A stretch of DNA of 61,505 nucleotides, filler included, from Sluysia triapertura (taxonomy: Eukaryota), in assembly GCA_046118255.1 (NCBI GenBank). It is 5 parts of 5 records of this genome, joined end to end, with 100 filler letters (N's around TTAATTAATTAA, not from the genome) between each part and the next. Parts side by side here need not be neighbours in the genome. Positions count along the whole stretch, not along the records: positions 10,883 to 24,150 come from JBJNIA010048896.1; 4 more parts are not named here. One strand, given 5' to 3'. The position numbers were made by a program, and so were the translations under genes. The notes under the pieces were generated by a model. That model worked only from the letters and a program-made list of their open reading frames with translations, had not been told where the DNA came from and searched no databases. This document shows, one piece after another, positions 7,433-30,608 of the stretch; position 1 is the stretch's first letter, and every line of letters starts with the position of its first letter.

Positions 7433-7600
7433 TGTTAGACTTCATAAAATGGACTGACCGAGATTCTAACCCGGGGCTTCACGCTGAGCAGTTCCTATGC
7501 TCTAACCACTGATGTATCAGCCCCGTCTAACAATTTTATTTTATTATAGTCAATATTACTATCGTAATTCTACATGGCACTTTGGGCCTTTATCCCAACA
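7433..7600 (-). mobile_element. tRNA-Ala-like mini-element with TGTT...AACA termini, copy 1 (168 bp)
   Basis: Minus strand reads TGTTGGGATAAAGGCCCAAAGTGCCAT...TGTTAGAC-GGGGCTGA...TCAGTCCA-TTTT...GTCTAACA. Plus-strand flanks are AATG (7429-7432) and AGTG (7601-7604), a 4-bp TSD with one mismatch. Confidence 0.85.
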
Positions 7601-11393: not shown

Positions 11394-12432
11394 GTGTAAA
11401 TAAATCATTAATGAACATGTAATCTTTAATCAATATGTAAATAAATCATTAACCAATAAATAAAATTTGATGTATGAGACATGTATGTTAAATAGAATCA
11501 AATATTGTAATGTGTGCATAAAATAATATTGTTGTAAATATAATAAAATCTGAAAATTCTAAATGTGTAAAATTGTATTTATTGATTTATTGATTAGTAC
11601 AATTGTTTATTTTAAATTCATATTTATTTAATTCAAAAATTTTTTAACCGGAGTAATTTGTAATTTAAATTGGAATAATTTGATATTTTAATGATTAAAG
11701 TAAAATTTTTATTAATTTTTAATTTTAATTTTTTAATCTAATTATAATATTGATTATAATACTAATTTTTACATAAAATTTTGCAAAGGAATGTATTTAT
11801 TTTTATAATTTTGTTTTAATAATGACCTCAAGGTAACTTTTGTAATATATAAGAACCCAAAAAACAAACATAAAATCACACAAAATCTTATGAAAATAAT
11901 TCGATCCGTGTTGAACTGCATCAATTTCAAGACATTTAAGAATTCGTGGGTGAAGAGCTAAGCTGCCAATACAATTATCGTTAGTTTTTATTAATAAGTA
12001 CTTTTCAATTTTTAAAATTGCCTACTTAAAATATACGAAATATTCAGTTCAGCTGTTGCTGCTATTTCAAAGTAGCATATTAAATTTCTCATTTAAAATT
12101 TTCTTATTAAAGATCACATATTGATTAATGATTTATTTACACATATTTAAACATTAAAAAATTTTTGAATTAAATAAATAAAAATTTATAATAAACAATT
12201 GTACTAATCAATAAATCAATAAATACAATTTTACACATTTAGATTTTTCAGATTTTATTATATTTACAACAATATTATTTTATACACATATTTCAATATT
12301 TGATTTTATTTAACATACATGTTTCTTACACATCAAATTTTATTTATTGGTTAATGATTTATTTACATATTGATTAATGATTTATTTACATATTGATTAA
12401 TGATTACATAATGATTAATGATTTATTTACAC
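11394..12432. repeat. Long inverted repeat (about 255-bp arms, 11394-11647 and 12154-12432) of an AT-rich dispersed family
   Basis: The arms are near-perfect reverse complements, e.g. ATTTATTGATTTATTGATTAGTACAATTGTTTAT vs ATAAACAATTGTACTAATCAATAAATCAATAAAT. No clear TSD. Confidence 0.85.
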
Positions 12433-12501
12433 ATATTTACATCAGAAATATTATATTGAATGATCTATTTTAAGCGCTTTTGAGTACTTACTTTGTAGTA
12501 G

Positions 12502-12659
12502 AGTTGGGGTAAAAGGCCTAAAAGTGCCATTTGGTAAAATTGAATTTAATAAAAATGAAATTGTTAGACGGGGCTGATAGCTCGGTGGTACAGCATTCGA
12601 ACTGCGCAGCGATGGTCCCGGGTTCGATCCCCGATCAGTTCATTTTACGAAGTCTAACA
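12502..12659 (+). mobile_element. tRNA-Ala-like mini-element, copy 2 (158 bp)
   Basis: AGTTGGGGTAAAAGGCCTAAAAGTGCCAT...TGTTAGAC(12562)-tRNA-like-TTTT...GTCTAACA(12659). Perfect 4-bp TSD GTAG at 12498-12501 and 12660-12663. Confidence 0.9.
12571..12642 (+). ncRNA. tRNA-Ala-derived Pol III unit (pseudo-tRNA) inside the mini-element
   Basis: Acceptor stem GGGCTGA/TCAGTTC, A box TAGCTCGGTGG, B box GGTTCGATCCC, discriminator A, then TTTT at 12643-12646. The anticodon stem does not pair properly, so it is not a canonical tRNA gene. Confidence 0.75.
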
Positions 12660-12699
12660 GTAGATATGAGCGCAATATAAATTAATATATTATTATTAA

Positions 12700-13335
12700 T
12701 AACAACCACATTTTAATAATAGCAACAATGATTTTATTTTTCAAACATTTTAAAAATCGCAACAACTTTATAAATACATATCGAGTTTTCAAAATTAAAT
12801 GAAGGTTAATAAAGTCTTAAATGATCTCAAGGTTAAGAAGTTCATAGGTGGCTTAATTCTTCTAAAGGTTTTGCAAACCAATCTCAAACCTCCACAAAGT
12901 CGCAAGACCCCATAAAGGTCTTTGGAATTCCAAGGTGTTCTTCGGCTTTCAACATTACAACAAATGGTTTCTTCCTCGTTATTCTTACTTCAGCTGGATA
13001 GTCCAAACAGCTGCTAATTTCCTGATACCGAATTGCCTTTGGATGAATAATGTTGAAAATCTCTCAAACGAATATGATACTAAATTATGTCCTTGTTTTC
13101 AGAAAATGTTGTGTTTTATGATTCACTGTAGCCAGTATATATAGCAGTTAACAACCAATCAAAATTAAATAAAATTCTAGAATTTTCTAGAATATTCTTT
13201 TTTCCTTTTTAGAAAATAATATTTTCTTTTTTCAAAAACGTATTATCTTTTTTGGAAATTCATTTTCTTTTTCGAAAATTAACTCTATTTTTGTATTTTT
13301 AAAAATTTTAAAGGGTTGTGGATGACAACCTAATA
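12700..13335 (-). mobile_element. Solo-LTR-like element with HSE array, diverged copy; distal end not resolved
   Basis: Minus strand begins TATTAGGTTGTCATCCACAAC, compare TGTTAGGTTGTCATCACAA at 37177. Five phased nGAAn units at 13175-13197, then ATTGG and TATATA (13137-13160). Start coordinate approximate. Confidence 0.6.
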
Positions 13336-18609: not shown

Positions 18610-19991
18610 CAAACACAATTTATATTATAACAAATTAACGATACTATTTCATAAATAAAACAGAATAAACTATTACTTATTTATAGTTTTCAGTTTTAGT
18701 ACACTTTTAATTACTACATTGCATTTAGTTAAATAAATTTCATTTCAAAAGTATAGGACACATTATACAAACTTTTTATTTAAAAGACTTTTCAACGTAT
18801 TGTAGGAAATTAATATTTTATTGATTTTCCTGAGTTTTTCAATACCTCGACACACTTTTTGTCATCGAATTAATCAATGTATTTAAACTTTTATTTCAAT
18901 CTTTTCCCAAGCATCCAATATTGCATTTTTTTAACTCAAAAAAGGGGAAAGTAATGCAAAAATTGCCAAAAAGTTAGACAAATCAAGACATGCAATATCA
19001 AATTATTTGGATAATAATTATAAAAAGCAATGAAAACAAATTGGCAATTCCTAATCGACAGAAAAGGAATTTAATAAGGTATGCGAAAAATACAACATTG
19101 TTTACATCTCGCATAATGTCAGATTTAGAGCTATACTGCAGTAAAGCAACAGTAAGGAGAATATTAAAAATAGTGGTGAGATCAAATTTATTAAAATGCT
19201 TGCTAAACCTCCACTTACTGATGCTCATAAAATAGCAATAATTAATTTTGCCGAAAATCATATTAATAACCACACTGACTAGGCTAAGATAATATTCTCA
19301 AGTAAGAACAAATTTAATTTGGATTCAAAAGAAATATTTTCTAAGAGAATTTGTGGTGGAAGATCACTTATGGTATTGGGTGTCGTAATTTATGGTAAAA
19401 AGCTAGGTTTACATGTGGTTCTATCAACTCTTAATGGTGATAATTAATATGATTAGATAAAAATAGTAGTTCCGTATGTCAAACTTCCAAAAAATATCAA
19501 TGTCATCTTTCAGCAGGCTAAAGCTACTGCTAAAACTACACTTAATAAGTTCAGTGAGGATGGATTAAAAGTGTTAGAATGGCTAGAAAGATCCCCTGAC
19601 CTCAATCCAACAGAAAATTTATGGTCTCAATATAGTCAAGGAAAACAGTATAACATATCTGAGTTAAAAATGCAATTTTGGATGCTTGGGAAAATATTGA
19701 AATAAAGTCTAAATATATTGATTAATTCGATGAGAAAAAAGTGTGTCGAGATATTGAAAAATTCAGGAACATCAATAAAATACTAATTTTGTTCAATACT
19801 TTGTATAGTATCTTAAATAAAAAGTTTGTATAATGTGTCATGTACTTTTGAAACAAAATGCAATATTTAACTAAATGCAATATAGTAATTAAAAGTGTGC
19901 TAAAATTGGAAACAATAAATAAGTAATAGTTTATTCGTGTATTATTTATTAAATAGTATTGATAATTTTGTTATAATATAAATTGCGTTTG
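18610..19991 (+). mobile_element. Full-length but inactivated Tc1/Tc3-like transposon with about 175-bp TIRs
   Basis: TIRs at about 18610-18783 and 19812-19991, followed by TA. Transposase remnants: SKATVRRIL, IFSSKNKFNLD, GGRSLMV, IFQQ, WLERSPDLNPTENLW (~19580-19625). Many stops and frameshifts. Confidence 0.92.
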
Positions 19992-20315
19992 TACTTTTGT
20001 AATTACTTTTTTAAAATATGTATATCATATCTTATCATATCATATTTTAAAGTTAGACGATTAAGAGAATCGCAAAATTCACTTTAAACAATTTAATTAT
20101 TTAAATTAATAATTTAGAATTATTACAGTGGTATTGTTCATAAACCTAATATAGGTGATTATAAAAATAAAAATGGTCGTTTTTTAAAGATTGTGCGATA
20201 TGCTATTTTATAAAAGTATTCTGCCTTACGTAACATTCATTTTATTACTGATACTTATTTCCTGAAATAAGAAATTAACTTGTTGCAATAAATTCGTTTT
20301 ATTTATATTTTAAAG

Positions 20316-23252
20316 ATAATCCTACAACGGACATAATGAAGGAGTATCGTCTCGCATTAGAAGAAATGCAACTTCATATAGATAACATCAAGTCTCGCTA
20401 TCCTAGTTTCACTGTTCCTGCAAAACGTTATGAAAACAATATAAATCGTGGTATCGAATATTATCGGAAGTTTGTTAGAAGAAAACAAAGGCAAGAAAGT
20501 AATGAGTATAATATGCCAGAAAGTAGGTGTGTACCAATTGTAAAATTAGAATCAATAATACCAGCAAATGTTGAAAATACGATAAACCAGTACGTTTGTT
20601 TAATTGTTTCTTATTTTAAAAATAATTTTCATTTTTTTATAAAACCCTTGAAAGTATAAGTAAACAAATAAATAAATAAAAAATAAACAATATATAAAAT
20701 TGATTTTAAATATTAATTATTATATATAATAATATAATCTTTTTATTTAATTAAATTGAATTTTTAAAATTTCATTAAATGGAGATTGAAAAAATTGTAA
20801 TTTGTGGCTTGTACAACATTAGTGAAGAAAATTAATCAATCCGCAAATTCTTGTAGATTAGTGTTATTGGTTTTTTCTTTTTCTCTTTATTGCAAATTAA
20901 AGCTTTTATCTATGGATCTTTCTACAGTCTACGATTTATAAATTCTCTTCACTTTATTTAGAAGTTCTGGTTCTCAATCGTCTCACTATTTATTAATTTC
21001 CTTTTAATGCTTCTAAGATATGCAGAAAAATTTATTCTCAAAATATATACAAGATATATTAAAACTTTGTAAGAATAAGAATTATTTATCAAAATATTTA
21101 TAAAATACACAAATTCGACTAAAATTCTTGCAAACAAAAGAATCAATAAGAATTTAATATATTAGAGTTTAGGTTCTAGTATCAAAATGTATTTTAATGG
21201 CGATTTTGAAATTGTGATCACACCACTTTTTTAAAAATATGAAAAAGTTAAGTCTATTATAAGTCTCAATTACTTGTGACATTTACAACTACAAAACTTA
21301 CGATCATGGATACAAAGAATGGATAAGAGTGGTTTTCTTCAAAGAAAGTCCTTTATCTGAATTTGATCGTAGAATGAATAACTTCTCAATAGACCAGACA
21401 AATACTTTCTCTTCAAAAATAACTGATAATGATTGTTAAAATTTTATTATTTTACATATTGAAATAAAACTGCTATAAATTTCTAAATAAAATAAAAATA
21501 AAAATTTATTGGTTCTAAAATTTTATCTAAAAAAATTATAATTTTAAGTAGATTTCATAAAATAAATAATTACAAGTTTTTATACATTCTTTACAACCTT
21601 TTAAATTTTTTAATTTTCATTTTTTCGAGAGTAGGACTTTAAGTTATCAATGTAAAAGTGGTCCAATGATAGTGTAGAAGATTTAATGACGCCTGTTTGG
21701 CGATTAAAGACAAAGACATGACTATTCACTCGAATATCACATATTCCGATGTCACAGAATCCAGTTCCAAATATTCGAACGATGCAACTGAGCTTTGGAT
21801 TTCTCGATCGAATGCATTTCGGAGTTTTTGATAGTGCTAAGAATGATTAATCAGTGTAGCGAGTAAATGCCATTTGAAAATTAAAGAAAAAGATAATAGA
21901 TTCACAAACATTTGACAGAATATTTCAATGATATAAAAATTTTTTAAAAGGATTGTTACTCATGACAAAAGTAATAATATTAACAGAAAGTAAAAAAGTG
22001 AATGATTAAGTGAAGGAGAGATTGGTCGACTGGTCGTTTTGAAGTCTTGATTTGGACAAATCTTAAAATATATATTACTTTGAATTGATTTCTGATTGTC
22101 AATCTATCAACCCTGGACTGTATCATAATCAAGTTAAAAGACTGGAAGCTACCATGACTGACAGTTATTCAGAATTAGTTAATGTAAATAAAGTTGTATT
22201 TCAGCAAGACAACGCCAAACCTTACACGTCGGAAGAAAGAAATTGTTAGATATTGACGTACTTGACTTAATTCCACATCTAACTTAGGGCCAGATTTTGC
22301 TCATTCTGACTATTATTTGTTAAATCAACGGTTTATTTTTTAAAGGACCTTCAATAGCAATGACTACATATATTTTTAGAGGTCGAAAATTTCGAAAATT
22401 CCTATTCATATTATTGAAGTTTATTGTTATGATTAAATATGATGCAAGTATCTTATTTAGCGAAATTTTGTATTTGTAAAAATATATCTGAAAATATTTC
22501 TCTTCTTTATACTATTGATTTTTAAGATTGCCATTGCTTATAAAATGATAGTTTAATAAAATTATTTAGATTTAGTTAACTTCGTGTTAGAATTTAACGA
22601 ATTTTTTAATCAAAAATTGTGAAAATTCTGTTTTAACATCCAGTAATTATTAGGAATTTTTGGAATTCATGAAATGAATTTTATTTTTAATATTTTGTTA
22701 AGAAATGTGTAGTTATAATTGATAAATTTAATACAATTTTTCAGTTCAAATGAAAAATGTCCAGATGCATTTATTGGCAATCTTGAAGCCGGTTTTAAAA
22801 AACTAATTAATCAATTTAAGCAAGAATATAATCAAGTGTTAGAGTTAAAAGTTGATGCTAAAACTATTAAATTACAAGAAGAAAACAAAACTTTATTGGA
22901 AAAAATTAATAAACCAACTGTAGATACTTCAACTCAAGTAGAATTCAATTCTCGGCCAAGTACTTCGGAGTTTACGAATAACACTACTACATCATCGTCA
23001 GAATTAATACCGGTCATAACTAATAATAATTCTGGCTTAATAAACCAACTAGTGAATTATATTAAATATTTGGAAGACAAATTGACCATTGCTGATTCAG
23101 AAATCAAACGTCAGGAGGTACTCAGTTCTATACGTTATGAAGAATTGACATTGGAATCGATGAAACAACAAAAAGAATTGAAAATTATTATGGAAAATGA
23201 TGTTAAATCTATGTTAATACAAGCAGCACATAAATTCAAAAAGAATGAATGG
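20316..23252 (+). CDS. ZMYND8/ZMYND11-like chromatin reader, partial (exons 20316-20589 and 22745-23252; possible divergent PWWP exon ~20118-20216; MYND exon not seen)
   Basis: The exons join in phase 2. YRLALEEMQLHIDNIKSRY resembles the post-PWWP helix of ZMYND8. The second exon is a coiled coil ending HKFKKNEW|gt, matching the KKKQW motif that immediately precedes the MYND finger. Confidence 0.6.
21620..22340 (+). mobile_element. Decayed mariner (DD34D) transposase in an intron
   Basis: FLKRIVTHDK (~21941), VVFQQDNAKPYTS (~22193) and GPDFAHSDYYL (~22287) match mariner VTGDEKW, HDNARPH and YSPDLAPSDYYLF. Boundaries approximate. Confidence 0.85.
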
Positions 23253-24250
23253 GTTTGTATTTTAATTTTTTAACAAATCCATTGTCGATATAAATGTTCA
23301 TTAAAGTTTTCTTAAATTTTAAAAATTAAAAAAATATTTAATTGTTCCACAAATCAGATTCGAGTAAAGATCATAAATGTTACATCAATGTATCAACTAT
23401 AAACAGTTTTTGTAAACCGTTAATATTATTTTCATTATAAAAAAGCTAGAAGGTATAAATTAATCAAAAAATTAATTATTTGTGAATTATTCTATTAAGA
23501 AATTAATTATGGAATTATTTATTAAATATGGACAATCAATTTAATTGATATTCTGCATTGCTTTACTTGTGTCAAGATTAAAAAATTAATTTATTAACCC
23601 TTATTATTCCAATCGGCAGTAATGCTGCCAATTAAAGTATTAATCTTTTGTACTCCTTCGTTATGTTTACTCATTCTTTGAGTGATACGGACTAAAATTT
23701 ATAGATACAATTCAACACTAATTATAAACGGCTTTCTATGTTCACCTAATGTGTACTAAAACATTAATTTATGAAAATAAGTTATTTATTTTATATACGA
23801 ATTAAAAAGTTGCACACGAATTTTAAGAAAAGGATTTTAAAAATAAGTTTAATAATAATAATGATAATGTGATAATGTGATAATGTGATAATGTGATAAT
23901 ATTTATATTGCTTTTATTGTATATTTCACAACGTTTGAAAATTATGAATGATAAGTTGCTTGGATTTTATGAATATTAATAACTTATTTGCTCTACAAAC
24001 ATTATGAATTTCTACATGCTTACATTTTATCTAATATTAAAACTACCGAGGCAGTCAAAATGACGGCTTTTAGTTTTCTTGCTAGAAAATTATATAATTA
24101 CAAATAATAATTTATTGAAACAATTGCATGACTTTTCTACATATTTGGTGNNNNNNNNNNNNNNNNNNNNNNNNNNNNNNNNNNNNNNNNNNNNTTAATT
24201 AATTAANNNNNNNNNNNNNNNNNNNNNNNNNNNNNNNNNNNNNNNNNNNN

Positions 24251-30502: not shown

Positions 30503-30608
30503 TGTTGGGGTACAGGCCTACAATAATCGACAATTGTTAGACGGGTTGATAGCTCAGTGATAGAGCATCGAACTGCTCAATGAGAGGTCCATTTTGCGAA
30601 ATCTAACA
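30503..30608 (+). mobile_element. tRNA-Ala-like mini-element, copy 3 (106 bp, internally deleted)
   Basis: TGTTGGGGTACAGGCCTA...TGTTAGACGGGTTGATAGCTCAGTG...GGTCC[T arm deleted]ATTTTGCGAAATCTAACA. Perfect TSD TTCC at 30499-30502 and 30609-30612. Confidence 0.9.

What the first reader, a model, noticed from the sequence alone, without database searches (positions are those of the whole stretch)
12498..12663. Integrase-type mini-element (TGTT...AACA, 4-bp TSD) whose only cargo is a tRNA-Ala-like Pol III gene; three independent insertions
Seen: copies at 7433-7600 (-), 12502-12659 (+) and 30503-30608 (+) share one layout. It runs: conserved head TGTTGGGGTAAAGGCC(YAAAGTGCCAT), variable AT-rich spacer, TGTTAGAC, tRNA-like unit (G3:U70 pair, discriminator A, A and B boxes), TTTT, then GTCTAACA. 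Each copy has a different 4-bp TSD (AATG/AGTG, GTAG, TTCC). Established: tRNA SINEs start at the tRNA, end in A-rich or simple-repeat tails and make variable, usually longer TSDs. TG...CA ends with a fixed 4-bp TSD are typical of Gypsy-type integrases (LTR retrotransposons, Ginger DNA transposons). Plant Cassandra TRIMs embed 5S rRNA in their LTRs. Inference: this is a tRNA-driven analogue, either a solo LTR of a Pol III-transcribed TRIM or a Ginger-type MITE carrying a tRNA. I do not recall this architecture being described, but I cannot search.
Basis: partly seen in the sequence, partly recalled or inferred. Interest (0 to 1): 0.9.

Follow-up and report, generated by a model that had tools for sequence, protein, structure and literature searches.

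The report
tRNA-carrying solo LTR (Helenus-type TRIM)
A 158-base unit carrying a decayed tRNA-like Pol III gene and flanked by a 4-base duplication looks like a leftover single LTR of a "Helenus" miniature retrotransposon, a class described in 2024, so it is probably a new family of a known kind.

Summary
It has a GC-rich head, an AT-rich spacer and TGTTAGAC. Then come a 72-nt tRNA-like unit (Rfam tRNA 31.1 bits, A and B boxes, G3:U70, A73), TTTT and GTCTAACA. GTAG flanks it on both sides. Two details differ. This copy starts AGTT, not TGTT. The tRNA-like unit is a pseudo-tRNA: ARAGORN rejects it at default settings and 3 of 5 anticodon-stem pairs are broken. The other two copies lie outside my piece and could not be checked. 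No further copy was found in any collection I could reach.

Kojima 2024 (PMC10886601) defined Helenus, a group of TRIMs with a tRNA-like Pol III promoter in their LTRs. Animal Helenus has LTRs of 104-323 bp and 4-bp TSDs, appears to be mobilised by Gypsy elements, and often survives as solo LTRs. Published LTRs share this layout: TGT..., tRNA-like unit in the 3' part, T-run, short tail ending ACA.

My best reading (about 0.5) is a solo LTR of a Helenus-type family not in the published set. A Ginger-type MITE is disfavoured, because the terminal inverted repeat is only 3-4 bp and the TSD is not CCGG or TATA-like. Paired LTRs with a PBS and PPT, and the copy number, remain untested.

The parts
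12498..12501 (+). Left copy of the 4-bp flanking direct repeat GTAG (putative target site duplication)
   Evidence: Read directly. At the exact boundaries only length 4 matches, out of lengths 2-10.
12502..12659 (+). 158-bp LTR-like unit, AG(TT)...(AA)CA; putative solo LTR of a Helenus-type TRIM
   Evidence: The layout matches published Helenus LTRs. There is no second copy in the piece.
12502..12530 (+). GC-rich head (45% GC in flanks of about 20% GC). Inferred to be the 5' end of U3, either an integrase end or an upstream promoter element, 41-69 bp upstream of the tRNA-like start
   Evidence: The function is inferred.
12531..12561 (+). AT-rich spacer (13% GC) with the TATA-like TTTAATAAAAAT at -26 to -15 from the tRNA-like start
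   Evidence: Weak evidence in an AT-rich genome.
12562..12569 (+). TGTTAGAC, the perfect inverted partner of the 3' terminal 8 nt
   Evidence: the partner sits at 12562, and this arises in 0.24% of shuffles.
12571..12642 (+). tRNA-like pseudo-tRNA unit with Ala-like acceptor features and intact A and B boxes. Inferred to be the Pol III promoter and the start of R
   Evidence: Rfam RF00005 at 31.1 bits. ARAGORN finds nothing at default settings and a distorted Ser(cga) at relaxed settings.
12643..12646 (+). TTTT, a minimal Pol III terminator directly after discriminator A. Inferred end of R
   Evidence: The hymenopteran and fungal Helenus LTRs read have T-runs at the same place.
12647..12659 (+). 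13-nt tail ACGAAGTCTAACA ending in CA (inferred U5); the last 8 nt form the inverted-repeat arm
12660..12663 (+). Right copy of GTAG

Best explanation
The unit at 12502-12659 is a solo LTR of a Helenus-type TRIM (TRIMp3). That is a miniature non-autonomous LTR retrotransposon whose LTR carries a tRNA-derived Pol III promoter.

Inferred mechanism, following the published class:
- In a full-length element, Pol III starts at the tRNA-like unit of the 5' LTR, so R begins near 12571.
- It reads through the weak T4 run, crosses the short U5, the PBS, the internal region and the PPT, and terminates at the T4 run of the 3' LTR.
- A cellular tRNA primes reverse transcription.
- A Gypsy-type reverse transcriptase and integrase supplied in trans make and insert the DNA, producing a 4-bp duplication (GTAG here).
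- Later LTR-LTR recombination removed the internal part and left one LTR between the duplicated GTAGs.

Shown here: the anatomy of this one copy, its flanking 4-bp repeat, the intact A and B boxes and the decayed cloverleaf.

Inferred: the U3/R/U5 assignment, mobility, and the Gypsy partner.

At this locus the relic could still give a 72-76-nt tRNA-like Pol III transcript. It is very unlikely to be a working tRNA.
For: (1) The layout matches published Helenus LTRs point for point: TGT-type start, 70-120 bp upstream part, about 72-nt tRNA-like unit in the 3' part, a T-run directly after it, and a short tail ending ACA.
(2) At 158 bp it lies inside the published LTR range of 104-323 bp. Animal Helenus makes 4-bp TSDs and often survives as solo LTRs with TSDs.
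(3) A perfect GTAG/GTAG repeat sits at the exact ends. The background rate is 1.1% for any 4-mer and 0.2% for GTAG.
(4) The A and B boxes are kept while the cloverleaf has decayed and the isotype calls disagree. Kojima reports the same for most Helenus LTRs.
(5) The head (45% GC) and the tRNA-like unit (60% GC) stand out from flanks of 19-23% GC. This fits an inserted, fairly young sequence.
(6) The terminal inverted repeat is only 3-4 bp, which is like an LTR and unlike a MITE.
(7) There is no poly-A or simple-repeat tail, and 69 bp lie upstream of the Pol III start but inside the duplication. Both argue against a SINE.
Against:
- This copy starts AG, not TG.
- No paired LTRs, PBS or PPT were seen. 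No Gypsy remnant was recognised in the ORFs of the piece that I scanned against Pfam.
- No motif of 8-11 nt from this unit occurs in the intended context in the published Helenus consensus file. It would therefore be an unrelated, independently arisen family.
- The perfect 8-bp inverted repeat joins the 3' end to an internal site (12562), not to the 5' end. A simple LTR does not need this.
- A T4 run inside the LTR requires Pol III read-through in the 5' LTR.
- The host is unidentified, so applying the rule that animal Helenus makes 4-bp TSDs is an assumption.
Confidence: 0.5

Rival explanations
1. It belongs to the same class but with different boundaries. The true LTR would be the inner 98-bp unit TGTTAGAC...GTCTAACA (12562-12659), which has perfect 8-bp TG...CA inverted ends. 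The head plus spacer (12502-12561) would be the internal region of a very small TRIM, or a second alternative 5' end (TGTT-GGGG mimics TGTT-AGAC). The locus would then be an 'internal + 3' LTR' unit.
For: The 8-bp perfect inverted repeat with the 3' end arises in 0.24% of shuffles, and the inner unit starts with a proper TG. After 3 nt the head reads TGGGGTAAAAGGCC, whose complement ends in CCA as a PBS target would (read). An A-rich stretch lies directly upstream of 12562.
Against: The GTAG duplication brackets the 158-bp unit, not the 98-bp unit, and nothing repeats around 12562. The implied primer acceptor stem would be too AT-rich for a nuclear tRNA. The purine tract is poor. There is no upstream LTR.
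Confidence: 0.12
2. It is a non-autonomous cut-and-paste DNA transposon (MITE-like) that carries a Pol III tRNA-like gene. A transposase that makes 4-bp TSDs would move it, either a Ginger-type integrase relative or another superfamily.
For: A 4-bp flanking repeat and TGTNR/YNACA-like ends are shared by Ginger and Gypsy. An 8-bp inverted repeat is present in the unit. The region holds decayed DNA transposons.
Against: Ginger1 and Ginger2 have TIRs of 40-270 bp and 50-180 bp. Their targets are CCGG/CCGT or AT-rich RTATAY. Here the terminal inverted repeat is 3-4 bp and the TSD is GTAG. The 8-bp inverted repeat is not at both termini. No transposase with such ends is in the piece.
Confidence: 0.13
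3. It is a decayed tRNA gene or pseudogene with its own upstream promoter region, possibly spread by segmental duplication. It would not be a mobile unit, and the GTAG repeat and the inverted repeat would be coincidences.
For: The Rfam tRNA hit, the A and B boxes, the TTTT terminator, and the head and TATA-like stretch at distances typical of upstream Pol III elements. Only one copy could be verified. The boundaries were chosen after the repeat was seen.
Against: The combined chance of the 4-bp repeat at the exact ends (about 1%) and the 8-bp inverted repeat ending exactly at the same 3' boundary (0.24%) is low. The cloverleaf is broken yet GC-rich, which is odd for an old pseudogene in a genome of about 20% GC.
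Confidence: 0.15
4. It is an ordinary tRNA-derived SINE (SINE2) retroposed by a LINE.
For: A tRNA-like Pol III promoter is the hallmark of SINE2. Kojima proposes that Helenus arises when a SINE2 inserts into a TRIM LTR.
Against: The tRNA-like unit sits at the 3' end and is followed by TTTT. There is no body and no A-rich or simple-repeat tail. 69 bp inside the duplication lie upstream of the Pol III start and could not be copied from a Pol III transcript. The TSD is 4 bp.
Confidence: 0.05

Closest known systems
Helenus (TRIMp3), TRIMs with tRNA-derived sequence in their LTRs; Kojima 2024, Biology 13:119, PMC10886601
   Same: An LTR-sized unit of 158 bp against the published 104-323 bp. The tRNA-like unit keeps its A and B boxes but is not a credible tRNA. 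It sits in the 3' part, followed by a T-run and a short tail ending ACA. The TSD is 4 bp, as in all animal families. Solo LTRs are common in the class.
   Different: No motif is shared with any published consensus. U5 is very short at 13 nt. This copy begins AG. A perfect 8-bp inverted repeat links the 3' end to an internal site. The unit is AT-rich outside the head and the tRNA-like part, whereas the wasp LTRs read are GC-rich. Full-length copies with a PBS and PPT were not seen. The host is unknown. Among arthropods only chalcidoid and cynipid wasps are published hosts.
Cassandra (plant TRIM with 5S rRNA in its LTRs) and Ajax (nemertean TRIM with a 5S promoter)
   Same: A Pol III small-RNA gene fragment embedded in the LTR of a miniature LTR retrotransposon.
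   Different: Those carry 5S-derived, not tRNA-derived, sequence and make 5-bp TSDs (Ajax). Rfam finds only a tRNA hit here.
tRNA-derived SINEs (SINE2)
   Same: A tRNA-like internal Pol III promoter. They are a possible evolutionary source of the tRNA-like part.
   Different: SINEs start at the tRNA-like head and have a body and an A-rich or repeat tail, with longer and variable TSDs. Here the tRNA-like part is 3'-terminal, is preceded by 69 bp inside a 4-bp duplication, and has no tail.
Ginger1 / Ginger2 DNA transposons and their MITEs; Bao et al. 2010, PMC2836005
   Same: TGTNR-type termini and 4-bp TSDs made by a Gypsy-integrase-like transposase.
   Different: Ginger TIRs are 40-270 bp and its targets are CCGG/CCGT or RTATAY. 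Here the TIR is 3-4 bp and the TSD is GTAG.

Membership tests
Helenus / TRIMp3 | tRNA-derived sequence with A and B boxes inside the repeat unit (LTR) | tested here: met
   Rfam tRNA at 31.1 bits against a gathering score of 29. A box at 12578-12588 and B box at 12621-12631, read.
Helenus / TRIMp3 | Two direct LTRs enclosing a PBS and a PPT in full-length copies | not testable with these tools
   There is only one copy in the piece.
Helenus / TRIMp3 | LTR termini TG...CA | tested here: inconclusive
The 3' end is CA. The 5' end is AG in this copy.
Helenus / TRIMp3 | 4-bp TSD (animal families) | tested here: met
   GTAG at 12498-12501 and 12660-12663. Background rate is 1.1%. This is one copy only.
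Helenus / TRIMp3 | LTR length and internal layout (tRNA-like unit in the 3' part, T-run, short tail ending ACA) | tested here: met
   158 bp against the published 104-323 bp. Layout compared by eye with consensus LTRs.
Helenus / TRIMp3 | Dispersed multi-copy family | not testable with these tools
   The source genome is not in any searchable collection.
Helenus / TRIMp3 | Sequence relationship to a published Helenus family | tested here: not met
   18 motifs of 8-11 nt from the unit were looked up in the consensus file. There were no hits in the intended context. This was string look-up only, not an alignment.
tRNA-derived SINE (SINE2) | Element starts at the tRNA-like Pol III start and ends in an A-rich or simple-repeat tail | tested here: not met
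   69 bp precede the tRNA-like unit inside the duplication. The 3' end is TTTTACGAAGTCTAACA.
Ginger1/Ginger2 non-autonomous element | TIRs of 40-270 bp; TSD CCGG/CCGT (Ginger1) or AT-rich RTATAY target (Ginger2) | tested here: not met
   The terminal inverted repeat is 3-4 bp and the TSD is GTAG. Criteria are from PMC2836005.
Functional tRNA-Ala gene | Canonical cloverleaf with an intact anticodon arm and U33 | tested here: not met
   ARAGORN finds none at default settings and a distorted Ser(cga) when relaxed. 3 of 5 anticodon-stem pairs are mismatched and position 33 is C (read). The MFE fold is not a cloverleaf. G3:U70 and A73 are present.

The most novel reading that the evidence does not exclude
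The unit never occurs as paired LTRs. It would be a free-standing, integrase-mobilised 'mini-cassette': a complete Pol III tRNA-like transcription unit with LTR-type TG...CA ends and 4-bp TSDs, moved as DNA or through an unusual one-LTR intermediate. Its nested TGTT ends (12502 and 12562) would serve as alternative 5' integrase substrates. That would be a mobile-element design outside both SINEs and the published Helenus/TRIMp3 class.
Probability: 0.12. Interest if true: 0.6.

Novelty: new member of a known kind. Interest (0 to 1): 0.3.

Why it matters
If confirmed genome-wide, this would add a Helenus-type family unrelated in sequence to the published ones, in a very AT-rich host. That would support the idea that tRNA-promoter TRIMs arise repeatedly. 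Such elements also inflate tRNA gene predictions and scatter Pol III promoters through a genome, which matters for annotation. It does not open a new class, because the architecture, the TSD length and the likely Gypsy dependence were published in 2024.

Tried and rejected
- Pattern scans for other copies, using the head, the tRNA-like core, and the inverted-repeat/GGGG/TTTT frame, gave:
  - metagenome contigs: 0 and 0 matches;
  - GTDB genomes: 0 matches, then one chance palindrome in a Lewinellaceae MAG that is not tRNA-like;
  - viral contigs: 0, 0 and 0 matches.
- The protein-word route used the open 46-aa reading frame across the unit. No candidates were found.
- Exact look-up of 10 window ORFs found none in the collection.
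- ORF 22719-23270 had no homologue in the word search. The exhaustive search found one distant relative, P0001, on a 1.2-kb soil-metagenome contig with 38% GC. This did not identify the host.
- Atlas look-ups were uninformative.
- I looked for a paralogous empty site among the flanks and found none.
- I rejected a functional tRNA-Ala gene, an ordinary SINE and a Ginger MITE. The membership tests give the reasons.

Full report
**What is there**

GTAG at 12498-12501 is followed by a 158-bp unit at 12502-12659, and GTAG occurs again at 12660-12663. The unit reads, in order:
- a GC-rich head, AGTTGGGGTAAAAGGCCTAAAAGTGCCAT (12502-12530, 45% GC);
- an AT-rich spacer (12531-12561, 13% GC);
- TGTTAGAC (12562-12569) and one G;
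- a 72-nt tRNA-like unit (12571-12642, 60% GC);
- TTTT (12643-12646), then ACGAA;
- GTCTAACA (12652-12659).

The flanks are 19-23% GC.

Rfam's tRNA model matches 12571-12642 at 31.1 bits, just above its gathering score of 29. The A box (TAGCTCGGTGG) and B box (GGTTCGATCCC) are intact. The acceptor stem pairs fully, with G3:U70 and discriminator A.

It is nevertheless not a credible tRNA.
- ARAGORN finds nothing at default settings. When relaxed it gives only a distorted 'Ser(cga)'.
- In canonical numbering the anticodon would be TGC, but three of five anticodon-stem pairs are mismatched and position 33 is C.
- The thermodynamic fold is neither a cloverleaf nor better than shuffles.

**Is it more than chance?**

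At the exact boundaries only a 4-bp repeat fits, out of lengths 2-10. Such a 4-mer identity occurs at 1.1% of positions in this piece, and GTAG itself has a frequency of 0.2%. The last 8 nt, GTCTAACA, have a perfect inverted partner that directly abuts the tRNA-like unit. This arises in 0.24% of shuffles. The 3' boundary is therefore marked twice, independently.

Within it there is no second copy or fragment.

**Attempts to reach other copies**

All attempts failed.
- Only one public run holds the locus.
- Pattern scans of metagenome, GTDB and viral contigs found nothing except one chance palindrome in a bacterial MAG.
- A protein-word search with the open frame across the unit found no candidate.
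- None of ten window ORFs is in the protein collection.

**What it most likely is**

The literature search settled the comparison. Kojima 2024 (PMC10886601) described Helenus. These are TRIMs, that is miniature non-autonomous LTR retrotransposons, whose LTRs contain a tRNA-derived sequence with conserved A and B boxes. Together with Cassandra and Ajax they are termed TRIMp3. The published properties are:
- animal Helenus families have LTRs of 104-323 bp and make 4-bp TSDs, whereas fungal and plant ones make 5-bp TSDs;
- their PBSs match Gypsy elements;
- solo LTRs flanked by TSDs are common;
- the tRNA-like parts mostly show isotype disagreement and are not thought to encode tRNAs.

The published consensus LTRs share one layout. 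They start TGT, have roughly 70-120 bp of upstream sequence, then the tRNA-like unit. A T-run follows directly after it in the hymenopteran and fungal LTRs I read, and then a short tail ending ACA.

The unit here has that layout, with 69 bp upstream, a 72-nt tRNA-like unit, T4 and a 13-nt tail ending ACA. Its length is within range, it has a 4-bp flanking repeat, and it has the same kind of decayed pseudo-tRNA.

I therefore read it as a solo LTR. By inference, U3 is 12502-12570, R is 12571 to about 12646, and U5 is 12647-12659.

The inferred life cycle is that of the class.
- Pol III starts at the tRNA-like unit in the 5' LTR.
- It reads through the weak T4 run.
- It terminates at the same T4 run in the 3' LTR.
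- Reverse transcription is tRNA-primed.
- A Gypsy-type integrase supplied in trans inserts the DNA with a 4-bp duplication.
- LTR-LTR recombination then leaves the solo LTR.

**What does not fit, and the rivals**

The defining feature of the class is two LTRs around a PBS and a PPT. I could not test this.

No motif of 8-11 nt from the unit occurs in the intended context in the published consensus file. If it is Helenus, it is a new family that probably arose independently. Kojima argues for multiple origins.

The 8-bp inverted repeat pairs the 3' end with an internal site rather than with the 5' end. This allows a variant in which the true LTR is the inner 98-bp TGTTAGAC...GTCTAACA unit. However, the GTAG duplication brackets the 158-bp unit.

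A Ginger-type MITE fails Ginger's criteria. Ginger TIRs are 40-270 bp and its targets are CCGG/CCGT or RTATAY. Here the terminal inverted repeat is 3-4 bp and the TSD is GTAG.

An ordinary tRNA SINE fails for three reasons. The tRNA-like part is 3'-terminal, it is followed by a terminator with no tail, and 69 bp within the duplication lie upstream of the Pol III start.

A non-mobile tRNA pseudogene with coincidental repeats cannot be excluded from one copy. I give it 0.15.

**Host and surroundings**

The piece is 18-31% GC and is poor in recognisable genes. It holds decayed Tc1-like and mariner-like transposase remnants.

One long ORF (22719-23270) has a single distant relative, on a soil-metagenome contig. 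The apparent mariner relic lies between two long same-strand ORFs, which suggests a genome with large introns, probably an invertebrate. The host is not identified.

Among arthropods, Helenus is published only from chalcidoid and cynipid wasps. I cannot say whether this is a new host lineage.

**Verdict**

The architecture has been described since 2024, so this is at most a new member of a known kind. Interest 0.3.

Noticed in passing
window 11403-11611 and 12190-12405: Two arms of a large inverted repeat, 92% identical over 216 bp, about 580 bp apart. 23-bp tandem repeats sit at the outer ends (12345-12431, 4 copies; 11421-11464). It looks like a foldback- or MITE-like element of about 1 kb, ending about 70-95 bp left of the tRNA-like unit. 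The arms may extend into 12152-12188, which I did not examine.
   Followed up: partly
window 18935-19702 (+): A decayed Tc1-like transposase broken by stops and frameshifts. It has an HTH_Tnp_Tc3_2_like match (E=7e-6) and a DDE_3 match (E=4e-4), with '...SPDLNPTENLW...'.
   Followed up: partly
window 22067-22290 (+): A short mariner-like transposase remnant ('VVFQQDNAKPYTS'). It lies between two long same-strand ORFs (20279-20656 and 22719-23270), possibly inside an intron.
   Followed up: no
window 22719-23270 (+); L002 608-1156: A 184-aa ORF, remarkable in DNA of about 25% GC, predicted to be coiled-coil-like. Its only relative among 1.8 billion representatives is a 182-aa protein (49% identity over 67 aa, E=4e-8) on a 1.2-kb forest-soil-type JGI metagenome contig with 38% GC. 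Function unknown.
   Followed up: partly
window 12798-13141: A GC bump (about 29%) just right of the element, with overlapping ORFs of 59-92 aa on both strands and no Pfam match. It may be another repeat or an exon.
   Followed up: partly
They were left out of all later searches and masked in scripts.
   Followed up: no
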